64,000 bases of DNA, taken from positions 42,656,001 through 42,720,000 of the forward strand of contig NC_088860.1 in NCBI RefSeq assembly GCF_963853765.1, written 5' to 3'. Shown one piece after another: positions 6,083 through 59,873 of the stretch. Both the position numbers and the translations under genes were made by a program. Numbering within the stretch: position 1 is the first letter of the stretch; every line of letters begins with the position of its first letter. The notes below the pieces were generated by a model. That model was not told where the DNA came from. It made no database searches and saw only the letters and a program-made list of their open reading frames with translations. This DNA comes from Magallana gigas (Eukaryota).

Positions 6083-6237
6083 NNNNNNNNNNNNNNNNNN
6101 NNNNNNNNNNNNNNNNNNNNNNNNNNNNNNNNNNNNNNNNNNNNNNNNNNNNNNNNNNNNNNNNNNNNNNNNNNNNNNNNNNNNNNNNNNNNNNNNNNNN
6201 NNNNNNNNNNNNNNNNNNNNNNNNNNNNNNNNNNNNN
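6083..6237. other. Assembly gap (155 N) inside a degenerate (GAT/AAT)-rich tract
   Basis: Run of N flanked by GATGAT-like sequence on both sides. Confidence 0.98.
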
Positions 6238-8590: not shown

Positions 8591-8755
8591 NNNNNNNNNN
8601 NNNNNNNNNNNNNNNNNNNNNNNNNNNNNNNNNNNNNNNNNNNNNNNNNNNNNNNNNNNNNNNNNNNNNNNNNNNNNNNNNNNNNNNNNNNNNNNNNNNN
8701 NNNNNNNNNNNNNNNNNNNNNNNNNNNNNNNNNNNNNNNNNNNNNNNNNNNNNNN
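8591..8755. other. Assembly gap (165 N)
   Basis: Run of N. Confidence 0.98.
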
Positions 8756-21938: not shown

Positions 21939-22189
21939 CATTAATGATGATGTCATGACAATGGTAAGGGCTGTGGTTGATGATGTTAGTCGAACTTAGG
22001 CCCATTGTAATATCTCAGATTCTTCGGAGTTCTAGATAATAATCGTGATGGTAATAATGGTAATAATAATTGGAGTTGTGGCAATGATAGCTATATACAT
22101 GTAGGTATGTTGGATAAAAAAGGTTGAAGTGGTGGTCATCTTTGTAACACAGGTACAGGAAAGGGGAATATGACTGAAGTCCCACTTAC

Positions 22190-23546
22190 CTTGAAAGTCC
22201 TTCCTGGCTGCACTAATATTGGTAACGATATTGGCAATATGTCCCAAAACAGTGGCAAACAGCAGGAGACCAAACATCATTTCGAATATTATGAAAACGT
22301 ATTGCTGATTGGTTGCTGGCGTTGGCAGGTTGCCAATCGTCGTGAGCGTTAGTGTACTCCAGTAGAGTCCATGCAGGTACGTCCGGAAGACGTCATCCGT
22401 GTCTTTGGGTATCTCCCACGTCCTGGAATCTCGGTCAAGTTTCGTTGCAACGATATAATACAGACACGCATTCCAATGAAATAAAGCCAACAAATAATGC
22501 ATTAACGTCGCAGTCCTCATAAGGTTCGGATAATTAGTATGTCGTTCAGTTCGGTCTAGAAATGCCCAGAATCTATAAACTTTAACAAGTCGAAAACAAC
22601 GCAAAATTGAGCAAAATCCAATGGAGAGATAAAGGAAATCCAGTGGCAACAGACACAAGCAGTCAATGTAAAAGATAGTGCTATTGGTATAATGTATACG
22701 GAGTTTAGTCGTGTCTGTTTGTAACACCCCGTCTTCAAGGTAACCCGTGCGGAAGTGGAAAGCCACGTCCAAAATGTACAGCAAATCAGCCGTATAGTCC
22801 AGAATAAACCAGAACGCCAAATTCTCACTACTTATTTCTCGGAATGCAAATCGGTAAATGATCACCCAAAAGTTGTACAGGAATGCAATACTGACGATGG
22901 AGGACCACCAGTAGGCGAGCCGCCCTGAGGGGTCAAACACAAAGGTCCAGTTACACCCATCCCGGTCCGTGGAGTTCGTGAGGGTCTCGAATTTGTCTGT
23001 TCGGTGACTCTTTTTGCCGAACTTCTCTTCGATATCCTTTTTTCGCTGTTTGCGCAGTTCCCTTGGCGTTATTATATCCCCTGAACGAACTTTTTTCAAC
23101 AGTTGCAAATCTCCGCGTGCTGCGAAACTCTTTGAGCGCGCCTTTCTGTCTATGCGCGTACCGAACAGATCTAGGAGGCTATTTTTGGACGTAGACCGTG
23201 ATTTTTGCTCAACTGTTTTGTTGGAGTATGCGGGGGAAGATAAACTGATTCTCCCTGTTAAACTGGAAGAACTCATTCGATCTCCCACAATCCTCCATCT
23301 AGAATGAGGATTGTTAAAAACCCCGGAGTTGGAAGGAAGATGGCGCGGTCCATTTGCTGTTTGGTTGGCCATCTTTTCGTTTTTGTAATCATCGTTCGGT
23401 AACGGTTTCTTTTCTTTATTTATGACGGCTATTTCCTCTTCCACATTGTCCTCGTCTGTATGCTCGTCTGTTTTTGCACAGGGTGTGTATTTCACGGTGA
23501 CACCAGAATCACTAGCGCGCTTGCGTGCATTCAACGTAATAGACAT
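22190..23546 (-). CDS. Cyclic-nucleotide-gated channel alpha-type subunit: exon encoding N-terminus, S1-S6 and pore (partial gene)
   Basis: Translation has FVFDPSG (pre-S1), FRTGYLEDG, S4 ILRCFRLVK, TNYPN, pore YWSTLTLTTIGNLPTP, and S6/post-S6 LFATVLGHIANIVTNISAARKDFQ. Acceptor TTTTTTTTCTCGAATTGCAG directly precedes the ATG at 23546; phase-1 donor AAG|GTAAGT at 22190/22189. From memory it resembles the Drosophila CG42260-type CNG subfamily. Confidence 0.93.
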
Positions 23547-25685
23547 CTGCAATTCGAGAAAAAAAATGTTCGTGTCTTCTCCTGATTATTTGTTTTGCAT
23601 TCCGTCGCTATTTGCTTAGCATAGTTATCATATTTGATGCATCCAAAGCGTATTGAGTAATTTACTGATTAAAACAAGGACGACAATATTTTTATTTCTT
23701 CCCCCGAATGATAGTTGTAAAACAAAAACAACAATATATCAGCCCAGCTAAGCTGCAAGCTTTGTTTTCTGATGACTGTCAACTTGGATAAGGAAATAAT
23801 AAGCGCCGCAGCACCGATGACAATTAAGTCAGCAGCCGATTTCCGAATCACAGGCCAGATTTTAGAGGAATTCCATGAGGAATTCACCAGTCTCAGCCTG
23901 GATTGGCATTTGAGGTAAAGGCGCTAAATTTTCCGGACGACTCTGTGCTTTGGAAGTATTTGAAACGCACACAATAGCCTGGAGACATATTCTTTTATCA
24001 GATCATGGTGAATAATCCCTGTAAAAGAGCTTGTTTGCACGCAATTCTGTCACACGCGCGAGTTTGTCGTTGAACTGAAGGGAGTCTTCGGTGGGAAGTT
24101 GCACACTTCGTGTAGTAACGTAAATTCAGTGTCCGCTTCCTCGGCAACATATGGTGTTTTCTGAACTAAGTCGGTCGCTCTTTTATCGACAAAACCTGCA
24201 AGTCTTACTGGAAAGGCTAAGTTCTCCATTCAAAACACCATCGCATATCGGCAGTGCGCCGGTCATTATTACTCGATAGTCCAATAAGTTCTGTAGCTGT
24301 GTTTGTATCTCTGTATCTCTGCATAAAAAAAGGTTAAAGGATTGAGAATTAATGGGAGGTTTGTGCATATACTTGAGGTAAAACGATCGGTGATTGTTGT
24401 ACGAGCGGATTGAACACACCACGTCTATTAATTGTCAATATAACAGCGATGTCACACGCTTGTTTGCCGAGTTGAAGTATCGACAAAAATTTGATATACG
24501 ATAAAAGCCGGCCCATTGATATATACCTATGCAGTTTTTTCCCCTCCGGATTAAAATTCACTATACGGTATGGGTTTTAACTTCTATAAAACGGTGGTTT
24601 GCTTATGTCCTATACTTGGAAAATTTTGCGGATTTATTACTTATTTATAGATTAGAGACACAATATTAGAGTGGCTTTTGTTCTTCAGCTATGCCGTCCA
24701 CAACAATGAAATTATTACATCTTTTCAACCTACTCAAAATATTCACAATATGTACGAAATGACGCCCAACTTTGTAGATGAATAGGGAAGATATATATCT
24801 AATAGAAATCTACCCACATATGCAACACAGACTTTAACTAACTAACGCCCGTATATGTTTTATCGCTGGGAGCCATTTCTAATTATAATCGAAACTTTAA
24901 TACAGACGATCAAATTTAATGATATATCGGGGTAACAGATGGTTCGCCATCACTCTGTTCTATATTGTGAGCTCAATCCCATTCTAGAACTTCCTTATTT
25001 ACCTTAATATAAACAAAAAAACCAACAACAAAAAATATAAGAAGACCGCAAATTATTTTTCACATCCATACCCTACACCTGGTGTTCAGTAGGAAAATTC
25101 TGTGTTAAATTTGCTTAAATGTCGAGGTCATTTTTATAGGCTACATTATTAATCTCATTTAGAAAAATAGTTAGCTCTGTGATAAAGATAAAGAAAAATA
25201 TAAAATTAAAAAGTTTTGCAATTTTCATTTACCTAATAAAAGTTTACGACCAAAATTATGATATACCCAGAGCTGTAAATCAATTCTGACGGTAAGTGTG
25301 TTAACCATCCACAGTCCTATAGACCGCTGTAGTACGTGTGATTTAGTGGACCCGAACTGCACATTGCTGTTTAGATAACTGCATGCTTTAAAATTCTTTT
25401 TTATTTATATGTTTGTGTTGGAATGTGGGAGATGTTTTAGATATACCGGTAGTCATTTTGACAGAAATGCGTACATGTAAGTTTGTTGAAGATCGACATA
25501 GATAGATGTTTTATTTCAAATCAATACAACACCTGTAAGAATTTTTAAAAATATATATATGGAAGACCCCCTCCGAAAAAAATAGAGAGATAGAGCATGC
25601 TTTTTTATCATCTCTCGCTAAGGACACTGTAGTTGCTTCTTCTAGATATATTTCTCGTACATAAGCCCTCAGGATAGTAGAGTTC

Positions 25686-28461
25686 TGCTCACACTATTTT
25701 TGGACCGCTCGCAGTATTACGGGACCGCTTGTACTATTACTGGACCGCTCACACTATAACTGGACCGCTCACACTATCACTGGACCGCTCACACTATAAC
25801 TGGACCGCTCGTACTATCACTGGACCGTTCGGCCGCTCACACTATCACTGGACCGCTCGTACTATCACTGGATCGCTCGTACTATCACTGGACCGCTCAC
25901 ACTATCACTGGACCGTTCACACTATCACTGGACCGCTCACACTATAAGTGGACCGCTCACACTATCACTGGACCGCTCACACTATCACTGGACCGCTCAC
26001 ACTATAACTGGACCGCTCACACTATAAGTGGACCGCTCACACTATAACTGGACCGCTCACACTATCACTGGACCGCTCACACTATCACTGGACCGCTCAC
26101 ACTATAAGTGGACCGCTCACACTATAACTGGACCGCTCACACTATCACTGGACCGCTCACACTATCACTGGACCGCTCACACTATAAGTGGACCGCTCAC
26201 ACTATCACTGGACCGCTCACACTATCACTGCACCGCTCACACTATAACTGCACCGCTCACACTATAACTGGACCGCTCACACTATAACTGGACCGCTCAC
26301 ACTATCACTGGACCGCTCACACTATAACTGGACCGCTCACACTATCACTGGACCGCTCACACTATCACTGGACCGCTCACACTATAAGTGGACCGCTCAC
26401 ACTATAACTGGACCGCTCACACTATCACTGGACCGCTCACACTATAATTGGACCGCTCACACTATCACTGGACCGCTCACACTATAAGTGGACCGCTCAC
26501 ACTATAACTGGACCGCTCACACTATCACTGGACCGCTCACACTATCACTGGACCGCTCACACTATCACTGGACCGCTCACACTATAAGTGGACCGCTCAC
26601 ACTATCACTGGACCGCTCACACTATAAGTGGACCGCTCACACTATAACTGGACCGCTCACACTATAACTGGACCGCTCACACTATCACTGGACCGCTCAC
26701 ACTATAATTGGACCGCTCACACTATCACTGGACCGCTCATACTTTCATCACACTATCACTGGACCGTTCACACTATCACTGGACCGTTCACACTATCACT
26801 GGACCGCTCACACTATCACTGGACTGCTCACACTATCACTGGACCGCTCACACTATCACTGGACCGCTCACACTATAAGTGGACCGCTCACACTATAACT
26901 GGACCGCTCACACTATCACTGGACCGCTCACACTATCACTGGACCGCTCACACTATAAGTGGACCGCTCACACTATAACTGGACCGCTCACACTATCACT
27001 GGACCGCTCACACTATCACTGGACCGCTCACACTATAAGTGGACCGCTCACACTATCACTGGACCGCTCACACTATCACTGCACCGCTCACACTATAACT
27101 GCACCGCTCACACTATAACTGGACCGCTCACACTATAACTGGACCGCTCACACTATCACTGGACCGCTCACACTATAACTGGACCGCTCACACTATCACT
27201 GGACTGCTCACACTATCACTGGACCGCTCACACTATAAGTGGACCGCTCACACTATAACTGGACCGCTCACACTATCACTGGACCGCTCACACTATAATT
27301 GGACCGCTCACACTATCACTGGACCGCTCACACTATAAGTGGACCGCTCACACTATAACTGGACCGCTCACACTATCACTGGACCGCTCACACTATCACT
27401 GGACCGCTCACACTATCACTGGACCGCTCACACTATAAGTGGACCGCTCACACTATCACTGGACCGCTCACACTATAAGTGGACCGCTCACACTATAACT
27501 GGACCGCTCACACTATAACTGGACCGCTCACACTATCACTGGACCGCTCACACTATAATTGGACCGCTCACACTATCACTGGACCGCTCATACTTTCATC
27601 ACACTATCACTGGACCGTTCACACTATCACTGGACCGTTCACACTATCACTGGACCGCTCACACTATCACTGGACTGCTCACACTATCACTGGACCGCTC
27701 ACACTATAAGTGGACCGCTCACACTATCACTGGACCGCTCACACTATAAGTGGACCGCTCACACTATAACTGGACCGCTCACACTATAACTGGACCGCTC
27801 ACACTATCACTGGACCGCTCACACTATAATTGGACCGCTCACACTATCACTGGACCGCTCATACTTTCATCACACTATCACTGGACCGTTCACACTATCA
27901 CTGGACCGTTCACACTATCACTGGACCGCTCACACTATCACTGGACCGCTCACACTATCACTGGACCGCTCACACTATAAGTGGACCGCTCACACTATCA
28001 CTGGACCGCTCACACTATAATTGGACCGCTCACACTATCACTGGACCGCTCACACTATTACTGGACCGTTCACACTATCACTGGACCGCTCACACTATCA
28101 CTGGACCGCTCACACTATCACTGGACCGCTCACACTATAAGTGGACCGCTCACACTATAACTGGACCGCTCACACTATAACTGGACCGCTCACACTATCA
28201 CTGGACCGCTCACACTATAATTGGACCGCTCACACTATCACTGGACCGCTCATACTTTCATCACACTATCACTGGACCGTTCACACTATCACTGGACCGC
28301 TCACACTATCACTGGACCGCTCACACTATCACTGGACCGCTCACACTATCACTGGACCGCTCACACTATCACTGGACCGCTCACACTATCGCTGGACCGC
28401 TCACACTATCACTGGACCACTCGCACTATCACTGGACCGCTCACACTGTTAAAGGACCGCT
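25686..28461. repeat. 20-bp minisatellite, about 136 units, with higher-order structure
   Basis: Unit TGGACCGCTCACACTAT + (CAC/AAC/AAG/AAT). An 11-nt insertion TACTTTCATCA occurs at 26740, 27591, 27862 and 28253. Both ends are degenerate. Confidence 0.98.
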
Positions 28462-39560: not shown

Positions 39561-39595
39561 TGTAATAAGTAAAGTATATCTGTCTTTGAATATAT

Positions 39596-40098
39596 TGTAA
39601 CGTGTTTTGTCCTGGGTTCTCAGGGATAATATATGCAATAAATTTAAACTCTACCTGAGTTAATAATGATTAGTACAATGATTTTTCTCTAATTGGGTAA
39701 CGTTTAAATCACTATCAATCATAAATGGGGATAATGTGTGAGGTGGGCTTTCAGTACTGTGTGTCTATACCCGGTTCCTATTGAGAGAGAGATACTTGGT
39801 GTCTCAATCTTCTTCAGATTTACTACACCAAGCACCTCACCTCAATTCCCAGGGTTTCTTGCCACTAGTTTCTATTCAACCCTACCTCTTAACTCTTCTA
39901 TCTTTCTTCTTTCTATTTTCTTTCTATCTATCTTGTCCTTTCTACTCCGCTGTTCACAGACGACTCCCCCACACTCTACAGCACAGCTGTTTATATAACC
40001 TTGGAGTAGTCCACTCCAAGGGTAGTCAGGTTATTCCATTTCCCCCACCCAAATCTAATTCATCACAACGTTTATTATAATAAGGCATAATCATTACA
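39596..40098 (-). repeat. 3' LTR (503 bp)
   Basis: Matches 43105-43612 except for one substitution and one net 5-nt indel. Confidence 0.95.
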
Positions 40099-40115
40099 TT
40101 ACCCACGCCTCTTTT
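40099..40115 (-). other. Polypurine tract candidate
   Basis: Minus strand AAAAGAGGCGTGGGTAA (14 of 17 purines) immediately upstream of the 3' LTR. Confidence 0.6.
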
Positions 40116-40300
40116 ACCATGCGTCCCGCATGTCTACTGATTTTTATTTTTAACCAAATTTTTTTTTCAAAGGTATTTAAAATATTTATTTTTCAAATAT
40201 AAATTACAAAACTAACATAACTTTCTGTTATTGGCTGAAATAAGACAACTAGTCTCGCCATAAATCAATTACTGTTCTTTGAGAGTTTGTTTCCTTTGAA

Positions 40301-40764
40301 TTAATCAAACCAAGTGTCCTCTTCAAATTTCTCAATATTTTCACCATTCTCTTGATATTTTCTAATTACTCTGATAATCTTCTGGTGGCCTCTCTTCTTT
40401 TGATCATCGACCTTAAAGTTGGTCTGCGTTCCAACGTCTACTTTTTCCCTCCCAACAGCCCTACAACAAGAGCAATGACTCGCTTTCAGGGGTCCTTCTT
40501 GGGACGTCGTTTCACAGATCTCTATTTCTACCTCAGGTTCTTTACCCTGTCCCTCTGACAATACTGGCTCTTCTTTTACAGCTTTGCGTTTGACACCTGG
40601 CAATCTTGGGGTGGTTCTCTTTCGGTATGTTCTTCCGACCTCCACTTCGTCAAATATCAACTCTCCAGGGTCTTTATCCCAATCTTCATCTTCTCCAACA
40701 CTCTTTGGTGTAGACTGAATCTGGTCTTTGGTGGCTGTTTTCACTTGGTCGTCACCGTGGACTC
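40301..40764 (-). CDS. Acidic/charged tail of the element's accessory zinc-finger ORF, separated from ORF1 by a 1-nt frameshift
   Basis: Open frame ...VHGDDQVKTAT...EDEDWDKDPGEL...GRTYRKRTTP...DVGTQT...EEDTWFD*. It joins ORF1 if one A is added near 40765. Confidence 0.75.
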
Positions 40765-42825
40765 TTTGATGTGCCTGGTTAAAATTGTCTTTTTCCCAAA
40801 GGCCTGATCACAAAACTCGCATTCAAACTTCCTTTTGGACATGTCTTCCAAACCACAAGCTAACAAATGTTTACTCCACTCATCTTTTGACTGAAGTCGA
40901 AACAAGCATCTAGTACTCAGATATTCTGGTTTTCTAGCTGTCGATTTTTCATTATTTTCTGTCAATCTAATATGGGAACACCCAATGTGGCCTTGTAACT
41001 GTAATTCATGCTCCACCCCTTGTATATACATTTTACTTTGAGATACGTCTATTACACAATGGCTTGATTTCAGAAATTCAAGCCCTAAAATTCCGTCGGC
41101 TTTAATGTTGGCAACAACAGCTGTACATTCAAACTTATACTCCCCTAGTTGGATTTTAAAATTTCCTTTTCCTTTCACTGACAAAGGAGTTCCATCTGCA
41201 CTAACTATGTTTTGTGCAACTGTTTCCAAAGTAATAGGACCAGCCTTTTCCATGCTCTCAAATATTCTATCGGCTAGAATTGTCAATGTTGCGCCGGTAT
41301 CAACAAGCAAATTGCATGGAACCATGTCTACAAGCGCGTTAATAAACAAACCAGATTCTGTACTGACTGAAGCATTCTTAACAGTGGCTGTGTTCGACTT
41401 TGTATCATGGCTTTTATTCTTGAACTGAGTTTCACAATGTTCACCTGGTTTAGATTTAGCAGCTTTCTTTTGAGCGTGTTCTTGGTTTAACTTAATAAAG
41501 CAATCTTTGATTTTATGTCCACGCCTTCCGCAGTGATGGCATTTAAAAGGGAAGTGATCGACATGCACTGCATCGGTATCATTTGATTTGTCTGCTTCCT
41601 TACTTGCAGATAATTTTGATATTTTATTCTCCAGATCTCTCATGGACTGTTGAATTTCCTGACGAAGCTTCATAATTTCTTCATTTACATCAATGCTACT
41701 CTGTGGAGAAGACGTATTTGTATCTACCACGTCCATTGTAGCACCACGAGCAAATCCGACGTCATGTCTACGTTGACGCTCGGCTCTACAGAACGCTTCT
41801 ATTTCGACTGCTAATCTGATGGCATCATTCAGAGATTTAGGACGGGACTGTTGAATACGCAGTCGCATGTCAAAATTCGACAGCGCATCAATGAACTGAT
41901 CTTTGGCAATCATTTCAGTTACATCCCTTGGTGCCGTAGGGTATGCAAGATGAGTCAAGCGACGTATGCTTTCCCCTAGCTCTGGTAAAGTCTCTGTCGC
42001 TTTTTGGCGTTTTTCCCTAAGCATTGCTCGGTACAACTCGGTCTGATTAACAGGTGCAAACCTTGCCTCTAATGCATCACATAAATCCTCATATGTGAAA
42101 ACTGTGCCTGTTTTTATGTTTCCGAGTACAGTCTGTGCTTGTCCTCTTAAAGATGCTGCCAAGTATAAACTCTTCTGTCGAGGATTCCACAAGTTAATAC
42201 TACAGCAGGCTTCGAAATGAGCTTTATAGTCTATCCATGAGGAAGTGCCATCAAATGTTGCCGGTTTCATGATAGTTTTACCCATATTATTATCTACAAG
42301 ATTGTTTTCAGTGTTACCTTGTGAGTTAACACTCCGATTAAAGACCTGGTTTGAATGTGGTATATCATTCCATGCACCATGTCTTGATGTCCAAGTAACA
42401 CTTGTTGTCGTTGATGTGGCACCGAGACTGTGTGTACTATGTGGAAAACTACCTGCGAGTAGCGTTTCCGAAAAATGTGGTTGTTCAATTGATCGAGGGT
42501 TTAAGTAATCACTATTCGCTTTGTACGTTTCTTGACTTGTTTCCCCTCGATAAATAGAGAAATCTGACTTTGGATATTTTGAATAACCAAAATTCTCCGC
42601 TGTGTCCGATTTAACATTTGCACTTGCAGTGTTTGCATACTGAGATGATCTATCATCCATACTTGCATCATATTTTGGTCTTACATCTACCCCGGAATCT
42701 GGTATCATAGAAGGATTAGATGTATATGGCGTAGACCTCAATCTATCCAATGTCTCTTTTAGCTTCTCACGTCTAGCATCTATTACGCTAAGATCAGCCC
42801 AAAGTTCAGCTTCTTTGTCATTCAT
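40741..42825 (-). CDS. gag-pro: Gag (capsid + CCHC knuckle)-aspartic protease-zinc finger polyprotein, 694 aa
   Basis: Capsid-like KPATFDG...W...L.G.A...RF...Q...E.L...AYP...QFIDAL (about 42270-41790); knuckle CHHCGRRGHKIKDC (41500-41541); protease LVDTGA (DTG at 41293-41301) with ILGLEFL; then S-x2-C-x12-H-x3-C and C-x2-C-x12-H fingers. Confidence 0.93.
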   Translation of the reverse strand: MNDKEAELWADLSVIDARREKLKETLDRLRSTPYTSNPSMIPDSGVDVRPKYDASMDDRSSQYANTASANVKSDTAENFGYSKYPKSDFSIYRGETSQETYKANSDYLNPRSIEQPHFSETLLAGSFPHSTHSLGATSTTTSVTWTSRHGAWNDIPHSNQVFNRSVNSQGNTENNLVDNNMGKTIMKPATFDGTSSWIDYKAHFEACCSINLWNPRQKSLYLAASLRGQAQTVLGNIKTGTVFTYEDLCDALEARFAPVNQTELYRAMLREKRQKATETLPELGESIRRLTHLAYPTAPRDVTEMIAKDQFIDALSNFDMRLRIQQSRPKSLNDAIRLAVEIEAFCRAERQRRHDVGFARGATMDVVDTNTSSPQSSIDVNEEIMKLRQEIQQSMRDLENKISKLSASKEADKSNDTDAVHVDHFPFKCHHCGRRGHKIKDCFIKLNQEHAQKKAAKSKPGEHCETQFKNKSHDTKSNTATVKNASVSTESGLFINALVDMVPCNLLVDTGATLTILADRIFESMEKAGPITLETVAQNIVSADGTPLSVKGKGNFKIQLGEYKFECTAVVANIKADGILGLEFLKSSHCVIDVSQSKMYIQGVEHELQLQGHIGCSHIRLTENNEKSTARKPEYLSTRCLFRLQSKDEWSKHLLACGLEDMSKRKFECEFCDQAFGKKTILTRHIKESTVTTK

Positions 42826-43091
42826 TTTAAATTTTCTATTTCTACACTAATACAAAAATACTACACAATTTTCTAATTCTTTTATTCTTATCGTTCACAA
42901 ATTCAAAATTCAGATACACGGTTTCTTTGAACCTGGTACACACTACCCGGTAACACTTCACTTGGTTCAAAGCACCCGGTAACAATGCACTCGGTATCCA
43001 GTTCCTAATACAAACGCTATATGATGATTCAAGAACAACAAAATTAAATTTATTAAATCAACGAAATCACTGATATTTTATCCCCGAACCG

Positions 43092-43101
43092 GCTGCCACC
43101 A
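43092..43101 (-). other. Primer-binding site, probably tRNA-Leu
   Basis: Minus strand TGGTGGCAGC, 3 nt after the 5' LTR; complementary to the ...GCUGCCACCA 3' end of metazoan tRNA-Leu(AAG/UAG), recalled from known sequences. Confidence 0.8.
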
Positions 43102-43104
43102 AAA

Positions 43105-43612
43105 TGTAACGTGTTTTGTCCTGGGTTCTCAGGGATAATATATGAAATAAATTTTCCTCTAACTCTACCTGAGTTAATAATGATTAGTACAATGATTTTT
43201 CTCTAATTGGGTAACGTTTAAATCACTATCAATCATAAATGGGGATAATGTGTGAGGTGGGCTTTCAGTACTGTGTGTCTATACCCGGTTCCTATTGAGA
43301 GAGAGATACTTGGTGTCTCAATCTTCTTCAGATTTACTACACCAAGCACCTCACCTCAATTCCCAGGGTTTCTTGCCACTAGTTTCTATTCAACCCTACC
43401 TCTTAACTCTTCTATCTTTCTTCTTTCTATTTTCTTTCTATCTATCTTGTCCTTTCTACTCCGCTGTTCACAGACGACTCCCCCACACTCTACAGCACAG
43501 CTGTTTATATAACCTTGGAGTAGTCCACTCCAAGGGTAGTCAGGTTATTCCATTTCCCCCACCCAAATCTAATTCATCACAACGTTTATTATAATAAGGC
43601 ATAATCATTACA
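43105..43612 (-). repeat. 5' LTR (508 bp)
   Basis: TGTAAC...ATTACA; minus-strand TATATAAA about 110 nt into the LTR. Confidence 0.95.
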
Positions 43613-44691
43613 ATATCTATCAATTTATCTAGATATTTTGAGGTATTTGTTGATGTATACTACCTTTTAAATAGACACTGTTCATATACGTTAGCTTCTT
43701 AAACATAGTGTTTATGTAACTGATAGGGGCATCGTATTTTTATTTAACATATAGGGATATAAAAAAATATCATGATTATGATGTTACCAAAACGATATAC
43801 TATTAACTGTTTTGTTCCGTTATATATGTGAGTGCTTATGTACTAAATTCTTGTAGAAAAATGAAATTTCACCTTTAACGTTATATTGTATCACACAATT
43901 CTAAACAAATATCGCTTTCCTTTTCAAAACATTTTAAACAATTGATAATCACTTGTCAGCCTCATTATTTTTTATTGGTCGTCATTATGGGTAGTTCATA
44001 AGGACGTACGTTAACTTTGTTTTATTAATGCACAGGCAAATAAGATTGTTGTGTAACGGTGGGAGGACATGCTCATCCAAAAATAAATACAAGCAAAAGA
44101 AAAATAGACATCATAAACTATTTTCGATCCTTTCATGCCAATTATTTAAAAGCTCCCCAAAAGTAGACAGTCAAACTCCATGTAAATTCACTTTTATACG
44201 TTATTTTTTTTATAATGTACATGTAGGCTGCGAGAAAGAGTGCCCCCACCCCCCAACTGATGCTACGCGCCTGATCAACATTTAAATGTTCCGGCGAATC
44301 AACAAATCCAGTAAAACTTCAATTATTATGATTGAATTAGCAATTCAACTCATAGAAAATTCTACAGCAGTGTTTAATAATTTAATAATTGTTTTTGTTG
44401 TCATTTTATTGATGCAAATTACAATTTGAACAGTAGCGATGCACCGCCATTAAGTTTTGTTTCATGTTAGAAATGAATCTAAAGATTAAACTTATTCAGA
44501 TTAACATACGAACATGTGTCCTTTTTTATTTACAAAATATGTTGTAATAAATTCCTCACAGTATAAACTTTTTACTGTAGATTTGAATGAAATAGATTTA
44601 GACAATTGCAAACTTCGCCGCCCTCCCTCTTGATCCGCCGATGCATTTAATGCAAAACAAAAGTACACTTTCTTTCTGGATAAAACCCACG

Positions 44692-46788
44692 ATGGCGACC
44701 GGAAGAAAACCAGTCAACAAACACGTTGTTTTCAACTGTACAATCTGTTTGCAGCAGATAGTTAAACCCAGATGTCTACCCTGTTCACATACTTTCTGTG
44801 AAGAATGTCTGCAGCATTTCATATCCAGGGAAGCAATTGGGAAAGAAGAGTCGAGTTTTGAGTTTAAATGTCCGATATGTCGCCGTGTATCTAGGTGTCC
44901 CGAGCAGGGAGTTCCCGTAGAGGAATGGGCGAAACATTTTCCAGCCAATCTATTACTTAATTCTCTGACCACATCTGTGGAGGAGCAATCTCAGGATAAA
45001 TTGTGTGCAATGTGTGTACGTGATAACAAACACGTAAAAGCAGAGTATTTGTGTAACGATTGCCGCGAGTTGATATGTGCGGCTTGTAAAGGTATTCACA
45101 AAATTAATGTCATTCTACAAAAGCACAAAATATCAGCAATTAATATGAAAGATCTAGATGACGACCTGCAGTTTCCAGACGTGGACGAACCTTGCCATAT
45201 ACATCAAGGTAAATTCGTGGAGGTATTTTGTCTGGATCATGACACGTTATGCTGCAGCATCTGCTTTGCTACCAAGCATAGACATTGTGAGCGTGTAGAA
45301 GCAATTGATGAAATCGTTAAAAGAATAGAGAAGTCAAACGTTGACAGGAACATTCAGGTTCTATCTAAAATAGCCCAGGTAACTAAAGAAATAGTAGAAA
45401 ACAAGGAACGCACGATTAGAGAATCTAATGCGAGAAAGGAAACAATCCTATCAAACGTTTCTTATGAAATTGAGAACCTAAAAACCAAGCTTGATGAATG
45501 TCAACAACAGTTTGAGAAAAATTTCTTAAAATTACACGAAGAAAATGAAGAAAGACAGAAGGAATGCGTCCTGGATTTAAAACACTTCTTGCTGACCATC
45601 AGAAATGGAGAGTCACTTTTATCTGCAGTTCAAGGGAAGGGTTCCACAAAGCAGACCTTTATAACGGCCATGAAAATAATTACTGATTTAGAAGAACAGT
45701 TCCAACAACACAAAGCCAACTACTTAGAAGATGAAGAGGTTCAGTACGAACATGACCACACAATCATACTCAAACAAGTGTGTGAGCAAGACAAAATAGA
45801 AGATGTCACCATGGTGAGAAGACCATCAGGGATCATCTGGAATCTATCAATGCATTTGTCATCTTTTGGAATCCTTGAGAATATAGAACAGAGACAATTC
45901 ACGGCATTTTATCAAAGCGTCACTAATCCTGCAAAACTGAAGGCGAAGAAAGAGTCCGAGTTTCAGATTTCGGGATCAGCACATCAAGGGGTTTTTGTTG
46001 ATAACGAAACACTTGTATTAGCCTTCTCATCTCCAGCTTCTCTGAAAGTATTTAATTCCAATTACACTGAGATGTCATTTGATTCTCCAATTGAACTGAA
46101 TGGGAAAATAAGCCTTTATGCAAGCCCTACCAAAACTATGTTGTATGTTGGGTGTATGTCGTCAGTTTATAAACTGAAGATTGTAAAGAAAAACGTGAGT
46201 GCTATTGGAGCCACGTGTAAGACTGAATTCAATGTGAAAGAATTTTTTGACATTTTTTGCGTGGATGAAGAGCAAAATAGGATTGTGGTTGCAACACGGG
46301 CTAAAATTACAATTATCACACTTTTGCCTATTTGTAATGTTCAAACAGTAGTAGTTCCGAGTCCTGAAACAGTTGCTTTACCACTACTTTGTTTAACTCA
46401 AGACCGATTAGCTTGCGTGAGTGGACAAACGGTAATTTGTTTTTCACTGTCTGGTCAGAAATTGTTCCAATTTCAAATTCCTAAGGTCCAAAGCATCAGA
46501 TGTATTACCTTTGATCCTTTAAAAAACGTGTATTGTGGGTATAGAAGCTATCAGGGATGCAAAAAGTACTGCGACAATTTAGGTTGGGGTGAATGTAACA
46601 ATTGTTTCAAGCCTCAGTGTGATCACAAGGACTTAAATGGAGTGTTTCAGATTCAGAGTGATGGCATTAACGGGCGATCTTTTATTACAGAGTACCCGGA
46701 TGCCCAGTGTTTAATCTTTGATGAGTATTCCGAACAATTTGTGGTCTCTAATGGAAATAAATGTACTGTCTACAGGCTCTGTATTTGA
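44692..46788 (+). CDS. Intronless TRIM E3 ligase (RING-HC, B-box 1, B-box 2, coiled coil, degenerate beta-propeller/NHL-like C-terminus), about 698 aa
   Basis: RING CTIC...CSH.FC..C...CPIC (44737-44880); B-box 1 CAMC...C.DC...IC..C...H...H; B-box 2 C..H...FC..H...CC..C...H; helical coiled-coil region; beta-rich tail. ATG at 44692 has a strong context (ACG ATG G); in-frame upstream ATGs exist from 44641. Confidence 0.92.
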   Translation: MATGRKPVNKHVVFNCTICLQQIVKPRCLPCSHTFCEECLQHFISREAIGKEESSFEFKCPICRRVSRCPEQGVPVEEWAKHFPANLLLNSLTTSVEEQSQDKLCAMCVRDNKHVKAEYLCNDCRELICAACKGIHKINVILQKHKISAINMKDLDDDLQFPDVDEPCHIHQGKFVEVFCLDHDTLCCSICFATKHRHCERVEAIDEIVKRIEKSNVDRNIQVLSKIAQVTKEIVENKERTIRESNARKETILSNVSYEIENLKTKLDECQQQFEKNFLKLHEENEERQKECVLDLKHFLLTIRNGESLLSAVQGKGSTKQTFITAMKIITDLEEQFQQHKANYLEDEEVQYEHDHTIILKQVCEQDKIEDVTMVRRPSGIIWNLSMHLSSFGILENIEQRQFTAFYQSVTNPAKLKAKKESEFQISGSAHQGVFVDNETLVLAFSSPASLKVFNSNYTEMSFDSPIELNGKISLYASPTKTMLYVGCMSSVYKLKIVKKNVSAIGATCKTEFNVKEFFDIFCVDEEQNRIVVATRAKITIITLLPICNVQTVVVPSPETVALPLLCLTQDRLACVSGQTVICFSLSGQKLFQFQIPKVQSIRCITFDPLKNVYCGYRSYQGCKKYCDNLGWGECNNCFKPQCDHKDLNGVFQIQSDGINGRSFITEYPDAQCLIFDEYSEQFVVSNGNKCTVYRLCI

Positions 46789-55753: not shown

Positions 55754-59873
<4,120 letters not shown>

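What the first reader, a model, noticed from the sequence alone, without database searches (positions are those of the whole stretch)
40855..41000. Protease is fused in frame to a zinc-finger module where RT should start
Seen: after ...LQLQGHIGCSHIRLTE the frame continues without a stop into Y-L-S-T-R-C-x12-H-x3-C (first ligand AGT, one base from TGT; 40855-40917) and then F-E-C-x2-C-x12-H. Knowledge: classical C2H2/C2HC fingers are nucleic-acid or protein binding and are not part of Ty3/gypsy Gag-Pol. Inference: loss of pol joined Gag-PR to a 3' accessory ZnF ORF, creating a new capsid-protease-zinc finger polyprotein that could be processed by its own protease.
Basis: partly seen in the sequence, partly recalled or inferred. 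Interest (0 to 1): 0.75.

Follow-up and report, generated by a model that had tools for sequence, protein, structure and literature searches.

The report
Pol-less oyster retrotransposon: Gag-protease-zinc-finger fusion
This is a young copy of a 4-kb oyster LTR retrotransposon that has lost its reverse transcriptase and integrase, so that capsid and protease are joined in frame to the zinc-finger accessory gene normally found after integrase; such fusions arose at least three times, but this copy's fused gene is broken by a frameshift.

Summary
On the minus strand, one ORF (42825..40741, 694 aa) runs from Gag (capsid-like domain, CCHC knuckle) through a retropepsin straight into S-T-R-C-x12-H-x3-C (40855-40917) and F-E-C-x2-C-x12-H (40771-40827).

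Full-length 7.6-kb relatives in Ostrea and Saccostrea carry a separate ~220-aa ORF after integrase, here called ORF3. It has a C2HC finger, a C2H2 finger, an acidic stretch, an NLS, CxCC and a C-terminal beta-hairpin, and it matches the window's tail end to end.

The window element (39596-43612) has 503/508-bp LTRs, a 4-bp target duplication, and the PBS, PPT and LTR termini of those relatives, but no RT, RNase H or integrase. It is therefore non-autonomous.

The rest of the tail lies in another frame (40744..40301). Intact 841-aa relatives exist.

Between sublineages the tail has dN/dS about 0.31, against 0.26 for Gag-PR. Three different junctions, nested among different standalone ORF3s, show independent fusions. 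The function of ORF3 and self-cleavage of the fusion are untested.

The parts
43613..43616 (.). Target-site duplication ATAT, upstream side in element sense
   Evidence: Same 4 bases flank the other LTR at 39592-39595. Full-length relatives also have 4-bp duplications: GTAC, CTAT, GTAG.
43105..43612 (-). 5' LTR (508 bp; TGTAATG...ACACGTTACA in element sense)
   Evidence: 98.4-98.6% identical to the other LTR, differing by one substitution and a 5-bp indel. Termini are shared with L006-L008.
43084..43101 (-). Primer-binding site (TGGTGGCAGCCGGTTCGG), 3 nt after the 5' LTR
   Evidence: TTTTGGTGGCAG follows the 5' LTR identically in L006, L007 and L008; the next bases are similar, with small differences.
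40741..42825 (-). ORF1, 694 aa: Gag, protease, finger 1 remnant and truncated finger 2
   Evidence: It is 93% identical to P0001 and 93% to the intact 841-aa P0299.
41761..42273 (-). Capsid-like helical domain of Gag (residues about 185-355)
   Evidence: Pfam Retrotrans_gag. AF2 of the intact relative gives pLDDT 86-98 here. Foldseek hits PNMA2 capsid at E 4.8e-5.
41500..41541 (-). CCHC zinc knuckle (nucleocapsid)
   Evidence: CHHCGRRGHKIKDC; Pfam zf-CCHC, 16.1 bits, below its 20.8-bit cut-off.
40990..41358 (-). Retropepsin, with active-site LLVDTGAT at 41287-41310
   Evidence: Pfam gag-asp_proteas and Asp_protease_2 above cut-off. Foldseek hits DDI1 RVP and retroviral proteases at E down to 2.9e-9.
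40939..40962 (-). Deletion junction (T-E-N-N-E-K-S-T). To the 5' side is the end of protease; to the 3' side is homology to ORF3 from about codon 4-5.
   Evidence: Alignment to full-length Pol (...GCFRVSLxETISIPPRSEM...) and to ORF3 (MPLTKVTPRKPG...). It lies in a predicted disordered linker in P0299.
40855..40917 (-). Finger 1 remnant, S-x2-C-x12-H-x3-C. This is a C2HC finger in standalone ORF3; the first Cys is replaced by Ser here.
   Evidence: The first Cys is Ser in every window-type copy.
40771..40827 (-). Finger 2, classical C2H2, truncated: C-x2-C-x12-H, with the second His lost to the frame change
40768..40770 (-). Site of the one-base length difference from sister copies that shifts the frame
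   Evidence: DNA alignment of the window with L003, L004 and L005.
40301..40744 (-). ORF2, 147 aa: the rest of the ORF3-derived tail in another frame (acidic DPGE block, GRTxRKRTTPxLPGVKRK NLS-like block, HCSCC, C-terminal beta-hairpin)
   Evidence: Colinear with standalone ORF3 and with the in-frame tails of P0299 and P0298.
40099..40132 (-). Polypurine tract (40099-40115) preceded by a conserved small hairpin CATGCG-GGA-CGCATG (40118-40132)
   Evidence: Closely similar in L006-L008, with a few substitutions.
39596..40098 (-). 3' LTR (503 bp)
39592..39595 (.). Target-site duplication ATAT, downstream side in element sense

Best explanation
The feature is the internal deletion junction of a non-autonomous Ty3/gypsy-type LTR retrotransposon of an oyster (element 39596-43612, minus strand). 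Its autonomous relatives are laid out as LTR, Gag-PR-linker-RT-RNaseH-IN in one ORF, a separate ~220-aa accessory ORF3, then LTR. ORF3 has a C2HC finger, a C2H2 finger, an acidic block, a basic NLS-like block, CxCC and a C-terminal beta-hairpin. It is preceded by a splice-acceptor-like site.

In the window's family, everything from just after the protease to about codon 4 of ORF3 is gone. Gag-PR therefore reads straight into ORF3 as one 841-aa polyprotein in intact copies.

Shown: the homology, the breakpoints, the intact cis signals (LTR ends, PBS, PPT, 4-bp TSD), purifying selection on the fused tail, and at least three independent fusions of this kind.

Inferred: the deletion arose by a template jump of reverse transcriptase or by a DNA deletion. 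The element is copied and inserted by RT and IN supplied in trans by autonomous relatives, while it supplies its own Gag-PR. The ORF3 part is kept because a nucleic-acid-binding accessory domain made in cis, as part of the particle protein, favours the element's own RNA or its expression, as reported for the gag-pol fusion protein of mouse IAP 1-delta-1.

This window copy inserted recently but is defective. A one-base frame change inside finger 2 cuts the protein at 694 aa.
For: - **Anatomy:**
- **Gag and PR domains:**
- **Tail matches a post-integrase ORF3 in full-length elements:** L002, L006, L007 and L008 have young LTR pairs (98-99% identical) and the layout Gag-PR / linker / RT-IN / p58C / ORF3. 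The alignment is colinear over all ~220 residues.
- **ORF3 is a separate gene:** it is in a different frame from IN in L006-L008. It has a conserved MPLTK start and a polypyrimidine tract plus YAG lying 1-35 nt upstream of the ATG. There are 14 full-coverage standalone homologues of 211-229 aa in Ostrea, Saccostrea and Magallana, and homologues in scallops.
- **No host-gene homologue:** beyond the generic C2H2 finger, nothing matched in an exhaustive search of 1.84 billion representatives.
- **Cis signals:** TTTTGGTGGCAG after the 5' LTR is identical in the autonomous elements, and the rest of the PBS, the PPT region and the LTR termini are closely similar.
- **Intact fused ORFs exist:** P0299 at 841 aa and P0310 at 820 aa; P0298 has an intact tail.
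- **Selection:** dN/dS of the tail is 0.31-0.32 against 0.26 for Gag-PR at dS about 0.2.
- **Independent fusions:** there are three different junctions, in the window type, in P0005/L001 and in P0142. P0005's tail is sister to standalone P0131 at 93% nucleotide identity. An AU test rejects a single clade of fused tails, with a log-likelihood difference of 168.6 and p about 1e-62.
- **Precedent:** the IAP 1-delta-1 fusion protein acting in cis is described in PMC6466679.
Against: - This copy is frameshifted. Several sampled sister copies carry their own tail lesions (L003, L004/L005, P0306, P0297). The closest pair (window against L003) shows 2 synonymous and 17 non-synonymous tail changes, so constraint on the tail may be weak or recently relaxed.
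- L001 against L009 gives a tail dN/dS of 0.53.
- Finger 1 has lost ligands in all three fused lineages.
- My sampling found fusions through long called ORFs, so out-of-frame deletion derivatives would have been missed. In-frame recurrence may therefore be partly an ascertainment effect.
- No autonomous partner with closely matching LTRs was found. The window-type tail sits on a long stem branch (0.95 changes per site).
- Trans-mobilisation, expression, self-cleavage and any function of ORF3 are untested.
Confidence: 0.8

Rival explanations
1. It is a deletion derivative as above, but the in-frame join to ORF3 is an accident with no function. The tail is a passenger that stays open only because the copies are young.
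For: Tail lesions occur in the window, L003, L004/L005, P0306 and P0297. The closest pair shows 2 synonymous against 17 non-synonymous changes in the tail. Finger 1 is degenerate in all fused lineages. Discovery was biased towards long ORFs.
Against: Across the deeper split (dS about 0.2) the tail has dN/dS 0.31-0.32, like Gag-PR. Intact 841-aa and 820-aa ORFs exist. Three independent in-frame fusions all retain finger 2 and the C-terminal hairpin.
Confidence: 0.13
2. The fused element is a retrotransposed copy of a spliced subgenomic RNA. A donor near the end of protease was joined to the acceptor in front of ORF3, rather than the join arising from a template-switch or DNA deletion.
For: All four full-length elements (and L009) have a splice-acceptor-like tract just upstream of the ORF3 ATG. 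Donor-like GTAAGT or GTGAGT strings occur in the R-V-S codons at the end of PR in L007 and L002. The window-type 3' breakpoint lies within a few codons of the ORF3 start. Cer1 makes a Gag-N-terminus to 3'-ORF protein by splicing (PMC10309623).
Against: The window type keeps 5-6 codons beyond the donor-like site and does not keep the ORF3 ATG or MPLT. The other two fusions break inside ORF3, at about codon 22 and about codon 33, and inside the Pol linker, not at the acceptor. L006 and L008 lack a good donor at that site.
Confidence: 0.05
3. The fingers come from a host zinc-finger gene captured by the element, or the locus is a domesticated Gag-derived host gene rather than a mobile element.
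For: RefSeq annotates ORF3 homologues as 'uncharacterized protein LOC...' host genes. C2H2 fingers are typical host domains.
Against: Those annotated genes sit as the last ORF inside complete LTR elements. ORF3 is conserved in that position from oysters to a scallop-related contig. Beyond the single C2H2 finger, the exhaustive search found only short ORF3-like proteins. The window locus has near-identical LTRs, a TSD, PBS and PPT, and there are multiple diverged copies.
Confidence: 0.02

Closest known systems
Mouse IAP 1-delta-1 elements (internally deleted ERV with a gag-pol fusion ORF)
   Same: An in-frame internal deletion of an LTR retroelement creates a new fusion protein. The element is non-autonomous and needs proteins in trans. 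The fusion protein is reported to help its own element in cis (PMC6466679).
   Different: There, part of gag is fused to part of pol. Here all of RT, RNase H and IN is lost and Gag-PR is fused to a zinc-finger accessory gene. Here the fusion arose at least three times. Cis action has not been tested here.
Cer1 (C. elegans Ty3/gypsy) CERV protein
   Same: A non-env accessory ORF lies after pol in a Ty3/gypsy element. It has a Cys-rich putative zinc-binding loop and an NLS, and it is expressed as a fusion of Gag N-terminal exons to the 3' ORF. It is needed for nuclear export of unspliced genomic RNA (PMC10309623).
   Different: In Cer1 the fusion is made by RNA splicing within an autonomous element. 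Here it is fixed in DNA by deletion of pol and includes all of Gag and the protease. There is no sequence similarity. CERV has a C4-type loop, whereas ORF3 has C2HC and C2H2 fingers.
Env-type third ORFs of errantiviruses and retroviruses (spliced subgenomic mRNA)
   Same: A separate ORF lies between IN and the 3' LTR, preceded by a splice-acceptor-like site.
   Different: No Pfam family other than zinc fingers matched ORF3, and the AF2 model shows two small fingers, long disordered stretches and a hairpin. This suggests a soluble nucleic-acid-binding protein rather than an envelope protein.
Gag-derived host genes (PEG10, RTL1, PNMA, SCAN-domain zinc-finger proteins)
   Same: A capsid-like Gag domain, with or without protease, is combined with other modules. 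SCAN-ZnF proteins pair a Gag-capsid-derived domain with C2H2 fingers (my own knowledge). Foldseek hits the PNMA2 capsid.
   Different: The window locus is still a mobile element with LTRs, TSD, PBS and PPT and with multiple diverged copies. It is not a single-copy host gene.

Membership tests
Ty3/gypsy-type LTR retrotransposon | Paired LTRs ending TG...CA, flanked by a short target-site duplication | tested here: met
   LTRs are 39596-40098 and 43105-43612, 98.4-98.6% identical. The TSD is ATAT.
Ty3/gypsy-type LTR retrotransposon | PBS next to the 5' LTR and a polypurine tract next to the 3' LTR | tested here: met
   Both are present, and both are conserved in the autonomous relatives L006-L008 (TTTTGGTGGCAG identical; remainder closely similar). 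tRNA identity was not determined.
Ty3/gypsy-type LTR retrotransposon | Gag with a capsid domain and CCHC knuckle, and a retropepsin with D-T/S-G | tested here: met
   Pfam hits (the knuckle is below its cut-off), AF2 model, Foldseek.
Ty3/gypsy-type LTR retrotransposon | RT, RNase H and integrase in that order | tested here: not met
   They are absent from the window element and present in relatives L002 and L006-L008. The window element is therefore a non-autonomous derivative, not an autonomous member.
Non-autonomous deletion derivative with a fusion ORF (IAP 1-delta-1-like) | Internal deletion relative to full-length relatives, joining two coding regions in frame | tested here: met
   The junction is at 40939-40962, and intact 841-aa ORFs occur in sister copies. 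The window copy itself is broken further downstream.
Non-autonomous deletion derivative with a fusion ORF (IAP 1-delta-1-like) | Mobilised in trans by proteins of autonomous elements, with the fusion protein acting in cis | not testable with these tools
   Only indirect evidence: shared cis signals and 4-bp TSDs, and multiple diverged copies.
Classical C2H2 zinc finger (Pfam PF00096) | C-x2-4-C-x12-H-x3-5-H, scoring above the Pfam gathering cut-off | tested here: not met
   The window's finger 2 scores 11.8 bits against a 25.2 cut-off, and the second His is lost to the frame change. It is met in relatives: L002 ORF3 at 28.2 bits, the P0005 tail at 25.7 bits, with H-x4-H.
Spliced accessory or regulatory gene of a retroelement (env position; Rev/CERV-like) | Separate ORF between IN and the 3' LTR, with an upstream splice acceptor | tested here: met
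   This holds in the full-length relatives only. The acceptor is a sequence motif and its use was not tested. The window type has lost it.
Spliced accessory or regulatory gene of a retroelement (env position; Rev/CERV-like) | Demonstrated role in RNA export, transcription or targeting | not testable with these tools
   There is no sequence or fold match beyond generic two-finger DNA-binding modules (E >= 0.12).
Domesticated Gag-derived host gene | No LTRs, with a single-copy orthologous locus under host-level selection | tested here: not met
   LTRs, TSD, PBS and PPT are all present, and several diverged copies lie on different contigs.

The most novel reading that the evidence does not exclude
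Gag-PR-ORF3 fusions may be a repeatedly selected strategy of parasites of retrotransposons. By building the lineage's nucleic-acid-binding accessory protein into its own capsid polyprotein, a pol-less element could gain preferential packaging, nuclear delivery or LTR-directed expression of its own RNA at the expense of the autonomous helper. The same step, a capsid joined to a sequence-reading finger, could be a route to host genes of the Gag-ZnF type.
Probability: 0.25. Interest if true: 0.7.

Novelty: new variant of a known kind. Interest (0 to 1): 0.55.

Why it matters
There are two points of interest beyond this one broken copy.

First, a lineage of Ty3/gypsy elements in oysters and scallops carries a conserved two-finger accessory gene after integrase. 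My four full-text searches found no paper describing it. RefSeq currently lists its copies as anonymous host genes.

Second, pol-less derivatives that fuse Gag-protease to this gene arose at least three separate times. In at least one lineage the fused tail stayed under purifying selection.

That makes a natural, repeated experiment on what an accessory protein gains from being tied to the capsid protein. It is testable with ordinary expression and binding assays. It also bears on how non-autonomous LTR elements compete with their helpers, and on how capsid-plus-finger host genes may begin. For genome annotation, it flags a class of 'uncharacterized protein' models in bivalves as transposon genes.

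Tried and rejected
- **Word search restricted to P0005's tail** returned only P0005 itself, so it was too insensitive to count fusions.
- **Exhaustive profile search with ORF3** was swamped by generic multi-C2H2 proteins. It served only to show that the non-finger part matches short ORF3-like proteins alone. The library has no names or context.
- **Foldseek of the ORF3 model** gave only non-significant two-finger hits. The model is mostly disordered (pLDDT 53.6).
- **L010** (O. edulis, 79% identical) is truncated inside PR and says nothing about the junction.
- **Species of the window:** the neighbouring TRIM-like protein is not in the collection as an exact sequence. The closest named relatives are Ostrea edulis proteins.
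- **Programmed frameshift from ORF1 to ORF2:** rejected, because sister copies are in frame there and break at other places.
- **In-frame stop after PR in L002 as a readthrough signal:** rejected, because L006-L008 have one continuous Gag-Pol ORF.
- **Exact breakpoint of the window type:** it could not be narrowed below about 5 codons, because no close autonomous relative was found.
- **Literature:** four full-text searches found no description of this ORF3.
- No contig that I took for human was met, and the N runs at 6083-6237 and 8591-8755 were left as they are.
Full report
**1. What is at the coordinates**

The feature lies on the minus strand. A single ORF runs from 42825 down to 40741 (694 aa). 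Pfam finds Retrotrans_gag (residues 224-291), a CCHC knuckle (428-442; 16.1 bits, below its 20.8-bit cut-off) and retropepsin models (about 496-590, active site LLVDTGAT); the Gag and two retropepsin hits are above their curated cut-offs.

After ...LQLQGHIGCSHIRLTE (40957-41004) the frame continues without a stop. It runs into STRCLFRLQSKDEWSKHLLAC (40855-40917) and FECEFCDQAFGKKTILTRH (40771-40827).

Three codons after the first His the frame departs from that of sister copies, and ORF1 stops at 40741. The remainder of the same protein continues in another frame as a 147-aa ORF (40744..40301).

**2. The element around it**

The ORF sits inside a complete LTR element, 39596-43612, read on the minus strand.
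- The LTRs are 39596-40098 and 43105-43612. They differ by one substitution and one 5-bp indel.
- In element sense the LTRs start TGTAATG and end ACACGTTACA.
- The element is flanked by a 4-bp duplication, ATAT.
- A primer-binding site (TGGTGGCAGCCGG...) follows the 5' LTR.
- A polypurine tract, preceded by a small hairpin (CATGCG-GGA-CGCATG), precedes the 3' LTR.
- The internal region is only 3.0 kb and holds no RT, RNase H or integrase.
- No second copy lies in the window.

**3. Relatives**

A protein search places the Gag-PR part among bivalve retroelement proteins from Ostrea, Crassostrea/Magallana, Saccostrea, Mytilus and Pecten. Four hits share the whole architecture:
- P0001 (783 aa, 93% identical)
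- P0002 (682 aa, 88%)
- P0005 (819 aa, 46%)
- P0299 (841 aa), found through the cluster look-up

P0299 reads from the Gag start to ...EEDTWFD without interruption.

P0004 (52%) lies on an 8.4-kb contig, L002. That contig carries Gag-PR, a Pol linker, RT-RNaseH-IN, the integrase p58 C-terminal domain and then a separate 221-aa ORF with a C2H2 finger. This ORF, called ORF3 here, aligns with the window's tail over its whole length. The aligned parts are:
- a C2HC finger (LCSICL-x-H-x3-C)
- a C2H2 finger (FEC-x2-C-x12-H-x4-H)
- an acidic W-x-x-DPGEL block
- GRTxRK(K/R)TxPxLPGVKRK
- HCxCC
- TQT
- a C-terminal HQKxIRVxRKYQxxGExxExxEEDxW segment

**4. ORF3 is a separate accessory gene of the lineage**

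Searching with ORF3 gave 20 proteins. Fourteen of them, 211-229 aa long, cover it fully. They come from Ostrea edulis, Saccostrea echinata, S. cucullata and Magallana gigas, and most are annotated as 'uncharacterized protein LOC...'.

I fetched three of these 'genes' with 10 kb of flank. Each is the last ORF of a complete element of about 7.6 kb, with 98-99% identical LTRs and the order Gag-PR, linker, RT-IN, p58C, ORF3.

In these three, Gag to IN is one continuous ORF. The stop after PR in L002 is specific to that copy. ORF3 is in a different frame from IN and starts with a conserved MPLTK. It is preceded, 1-35 nt upstream of the ATG, by a polypyrimidine tract ending in CAG or TAG, as an env-type spliced gene would be.

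More distant ORF3 homologues with the same layout occur in the scallops Pecten maximus and Argopecten irradians. One of that cluster (CI610_02658) is listed on a 6.9-kb contig; a Gag homologue with a neighbouring locus tag (CI610_02661) is listed on a contig of the same length, probably the same one.

An exhaustive profile search of 1.84 billion representatives found only short ORF3-like proteins matching the part beyond the finger. Every long hit matched through generic C2H2 repeats alone. I therefore see no evidence that the tail was captured from a host gene.

**5. The junction**

In full-length Pol the protease ends ...GCFRVSLxETISIPPRSEM.... In the window type it reads ...GCSHIRLTENNEK(S/L)T(A/P)RKPE(Y/F)LS.... 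From the K onward this matches ORF3's MPLTKVTPRKPGFLCS.

The window type therefore lost everything from 1-3 codons after L-x-E at the end of PR to about codon 4 of ORF3. That includes the splice-acceptor-like site and the ORF3 start codon. Without a close autonomous relative, the breakpoint cannot be narrowed below about five codons.

**6. Is the fused frame maintained?**

Each of the four window-type DNA copies compared has its own separate lesion in or near the tail:
- Window: a one-base length difference near 40768.
- L004/L005: a one-base difference about 30 nt upstream of that.
- L003: a nonsense codon after HCSCC, plus a 15-nt in-frame gap at the end of PR.

Two cluster members also have truncated or frameshifted tails (P0297, P0306). 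Gag-PR is open in all of them. P0299 is fully intact and P0298 has an intact tail.

| Comparison | Region | dN/dS (Nei-Gojobori) | Note |
|---|---|---|---|
| Window/L003 lineage vs L004 lineage | Gag-PR | 0.26 | dS about 0.2 |
| Window/L003 lineage vs L004 lineage | Tail | 0.31-0.32 | dS about 0.2 |
| Window vs L003 (closest pair) | Tail | about 2.1 (few counts) | 2 synonymous, 17 non-synonymous changes |
| L001 vs standalone ORF3 on L009 | Tail | 0.53 | P0005 type |

For most of its history the fused tail was under purifying selection, like Gag-PR. The closest pair suggests decay after insertion.

Finger 1 has lost its first Cys (to Ser) in every window-type copy, and has lost further ligands in some. 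The four ligands of finger 2 are kept wherever the frame is intact.

**7. Recurrence**

P0005 (contig L001) has a different junction. It keeps the first residues of the Pol linker (PPPSSEMIC, matching IPPRSEMIC). It joins ORF3 at about codon 22, which removes the CxxC of finger 1. From that point its DNA is 93% identical to a standalone ORF3 on contig L009, which still has its MPLTK start and non-coding upstream sequence.

P0142 (Saccostrea cucullata LOC134271478) shows a third junction. The end of PR and the linker TIPPRNRKICPKQF are joined to ORF3 at about residue 33, removing finger 1 altogether.

In an ORF3 tree the three fused types sit in three places, each next to standalone ORF3s. Forcing them into one clade costs 168.6 log-likelihood units, with p-AU about 1e-62. 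One caveat is that the group was named after I had seen a first tree.

A second caveat is that I found fusions through long called ORFs, so out-of-frame deletions would have escaped notice.

**8. Structure**

- **ORF3 alone (AF2):** mostly disordered, mean pLDDT 53.6. It has two ordered parts: the two-finger module (residues about 20-70, pLDDT 71-90) and a C-terminal beta-hairpin (195-220). Foldseek gives only non-significant matches to two-finger DNA-binding modules such as ADR1 and CTCF (E >= 0.12).
- **Intact fused P0299 (AF2):** mean pLDDT 65. It shows an N-terminal helix, a long disordered stretch, a helical capsid-like domain (185-355), a knuckle and the protease (490-612). A disordered 19-residue linker containing the junction (615-633) follows, then the fingers (634-690), more disorder and the hairpin (815-840).
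- **Foldseek of P0299:** confirms the retropepsin fold (DDI1 RVP and EIAV/HIV proteases, E down to 2.9e-9) and a capsid fold (PNMA2 capsid, E 4.8e-5).

An exposed linker is compatible with cleavage by the element's protease, but it does not show it.

**9. How it most likely works**

*Shown.* This is a pol-less derivative that keeps the LTR termini, PBS, PPT region and 4-bp target duplication of autonomous relatives, with only small sequence differences. It encodes, in intact copies, a Gag-PR-ORF3 polyprotein.

*Inferred.*
- RT and IN come in trans from autonomous elements.
- The deletion arose by a template jump during reverse transcription or by a DNA deletion.
- The ORF3 part is retained because a nuclear, nucleic-acid-binding accessory domain, translated in cis as part of the particle protein, benefits the element's own RNA. 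The mouse IAP 1-delta-1 element is a documented precedent for a deletion-born fusion protein that acts in cis (PMC6466679). Cer1 CERV is a precedent for a Gag-N-terminus to 3'-ORF protein that handles genomic RNA (PMC10309623).

What ORF3 does in the autonomous elements is open. RNA export, LTR transactivation and targeting are all possible.

**10. Verdict**

This copy is a recent but defective insertion.

The kind of thing is known: a non-autonomous LTR element with a deletion-born fusion ORF. What appears new is the zinc-finger accessory gene of this bivalve lineage and the repeated, selected fusion of it to Gag-protease. My four literature searches found no description of either.

Noticed in passing
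L006:10001-10648, L007:10001-10660, L008:10001-10675 (and the proteins): RefSeq 'uncharacterized protein LOC...' genes of Ostrea edulis and Saccostrea echinata are the last ORF of complete LTR retrotransposons, so they are transposon genes annotated as host genes. Homologous models in S. cucullata, Pecten maximus and Argopecten irradians probably are too.
   Followed up: yes
L002:6320-6365, L006:9955-10000, L007:9955-10000, L008:9955-10000, L009:126-171: A polypyrimidine tract ending in CAG or TAG lies 1-35 nt upstream of the ORF3 start in every full-length element (and in L009). This suggests ORF3 is expressed from a spliced subgenomic RNA. Use of the site could not be tested.
   Followed up: partly
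window 40118-40132; the same motif in L006-L008 just upstream of the PPT: A small hairpin, CATGCG-GGA-CGCATG, sits immediately upstream of the polypurine tract. It is conserved, with single-base variants, between the window element and the autonomous relatives, although the flanking sequence has diverged. Its role is unknown.
   Followed up: no
L002:1990-1992 and L002:2307-3298: The full-length contig L002 has a copy-specific in-frame stop right after the protease. It also has a stretch of about 1 kb without ORFs between the Pol linker and RT, while both flanks stay in the same frame. This may be an insertion or an intron-like segment.
   Followed up: no
window 44641-46788 (+): An intronless 715-aa ORF with a RING finger and a B-box (TRIM-like) starts about 1 kb from the element's 5' LTR. 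Its exact sequence is not in the protein collection.
   Followed up: partly
window 22032-23552 (-): A 506-aa single-exon ORF has an Ion_trans domain (E 2.5e-30) and looks like a voltage-gated cation channel gene or exon.
   Followed up: no
window 25687-28447: A minisatellite of about 139 copies of a 20-bp unit (GCTCACACTATCACTGGACC), 90% matches.
   Followed up: no
window 57904-58810: A GA-rich complex tandem array with nested periods of 57-265 bp, overlapping a 150-aa ORF on the minus strand.
   Followed up: no
L010:6682-9250 (Ostrea edulis OX387710.1): A 79%-identical relative of the window element, from the 5' LTR through Gag into PR, is truncated inside the protease. RefSeq annotates its Gag part as LOC130048651.
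   Followed up: partly
one search hit list (for example P0015, P0019, P0020, P0023): Many Mytilus proteins of about 900 aa combine Gag-PR with integrase C-terminal domains but lack RT. They could be gene-model artefacts, or another class of internally deleted elements.
   Followed up: no
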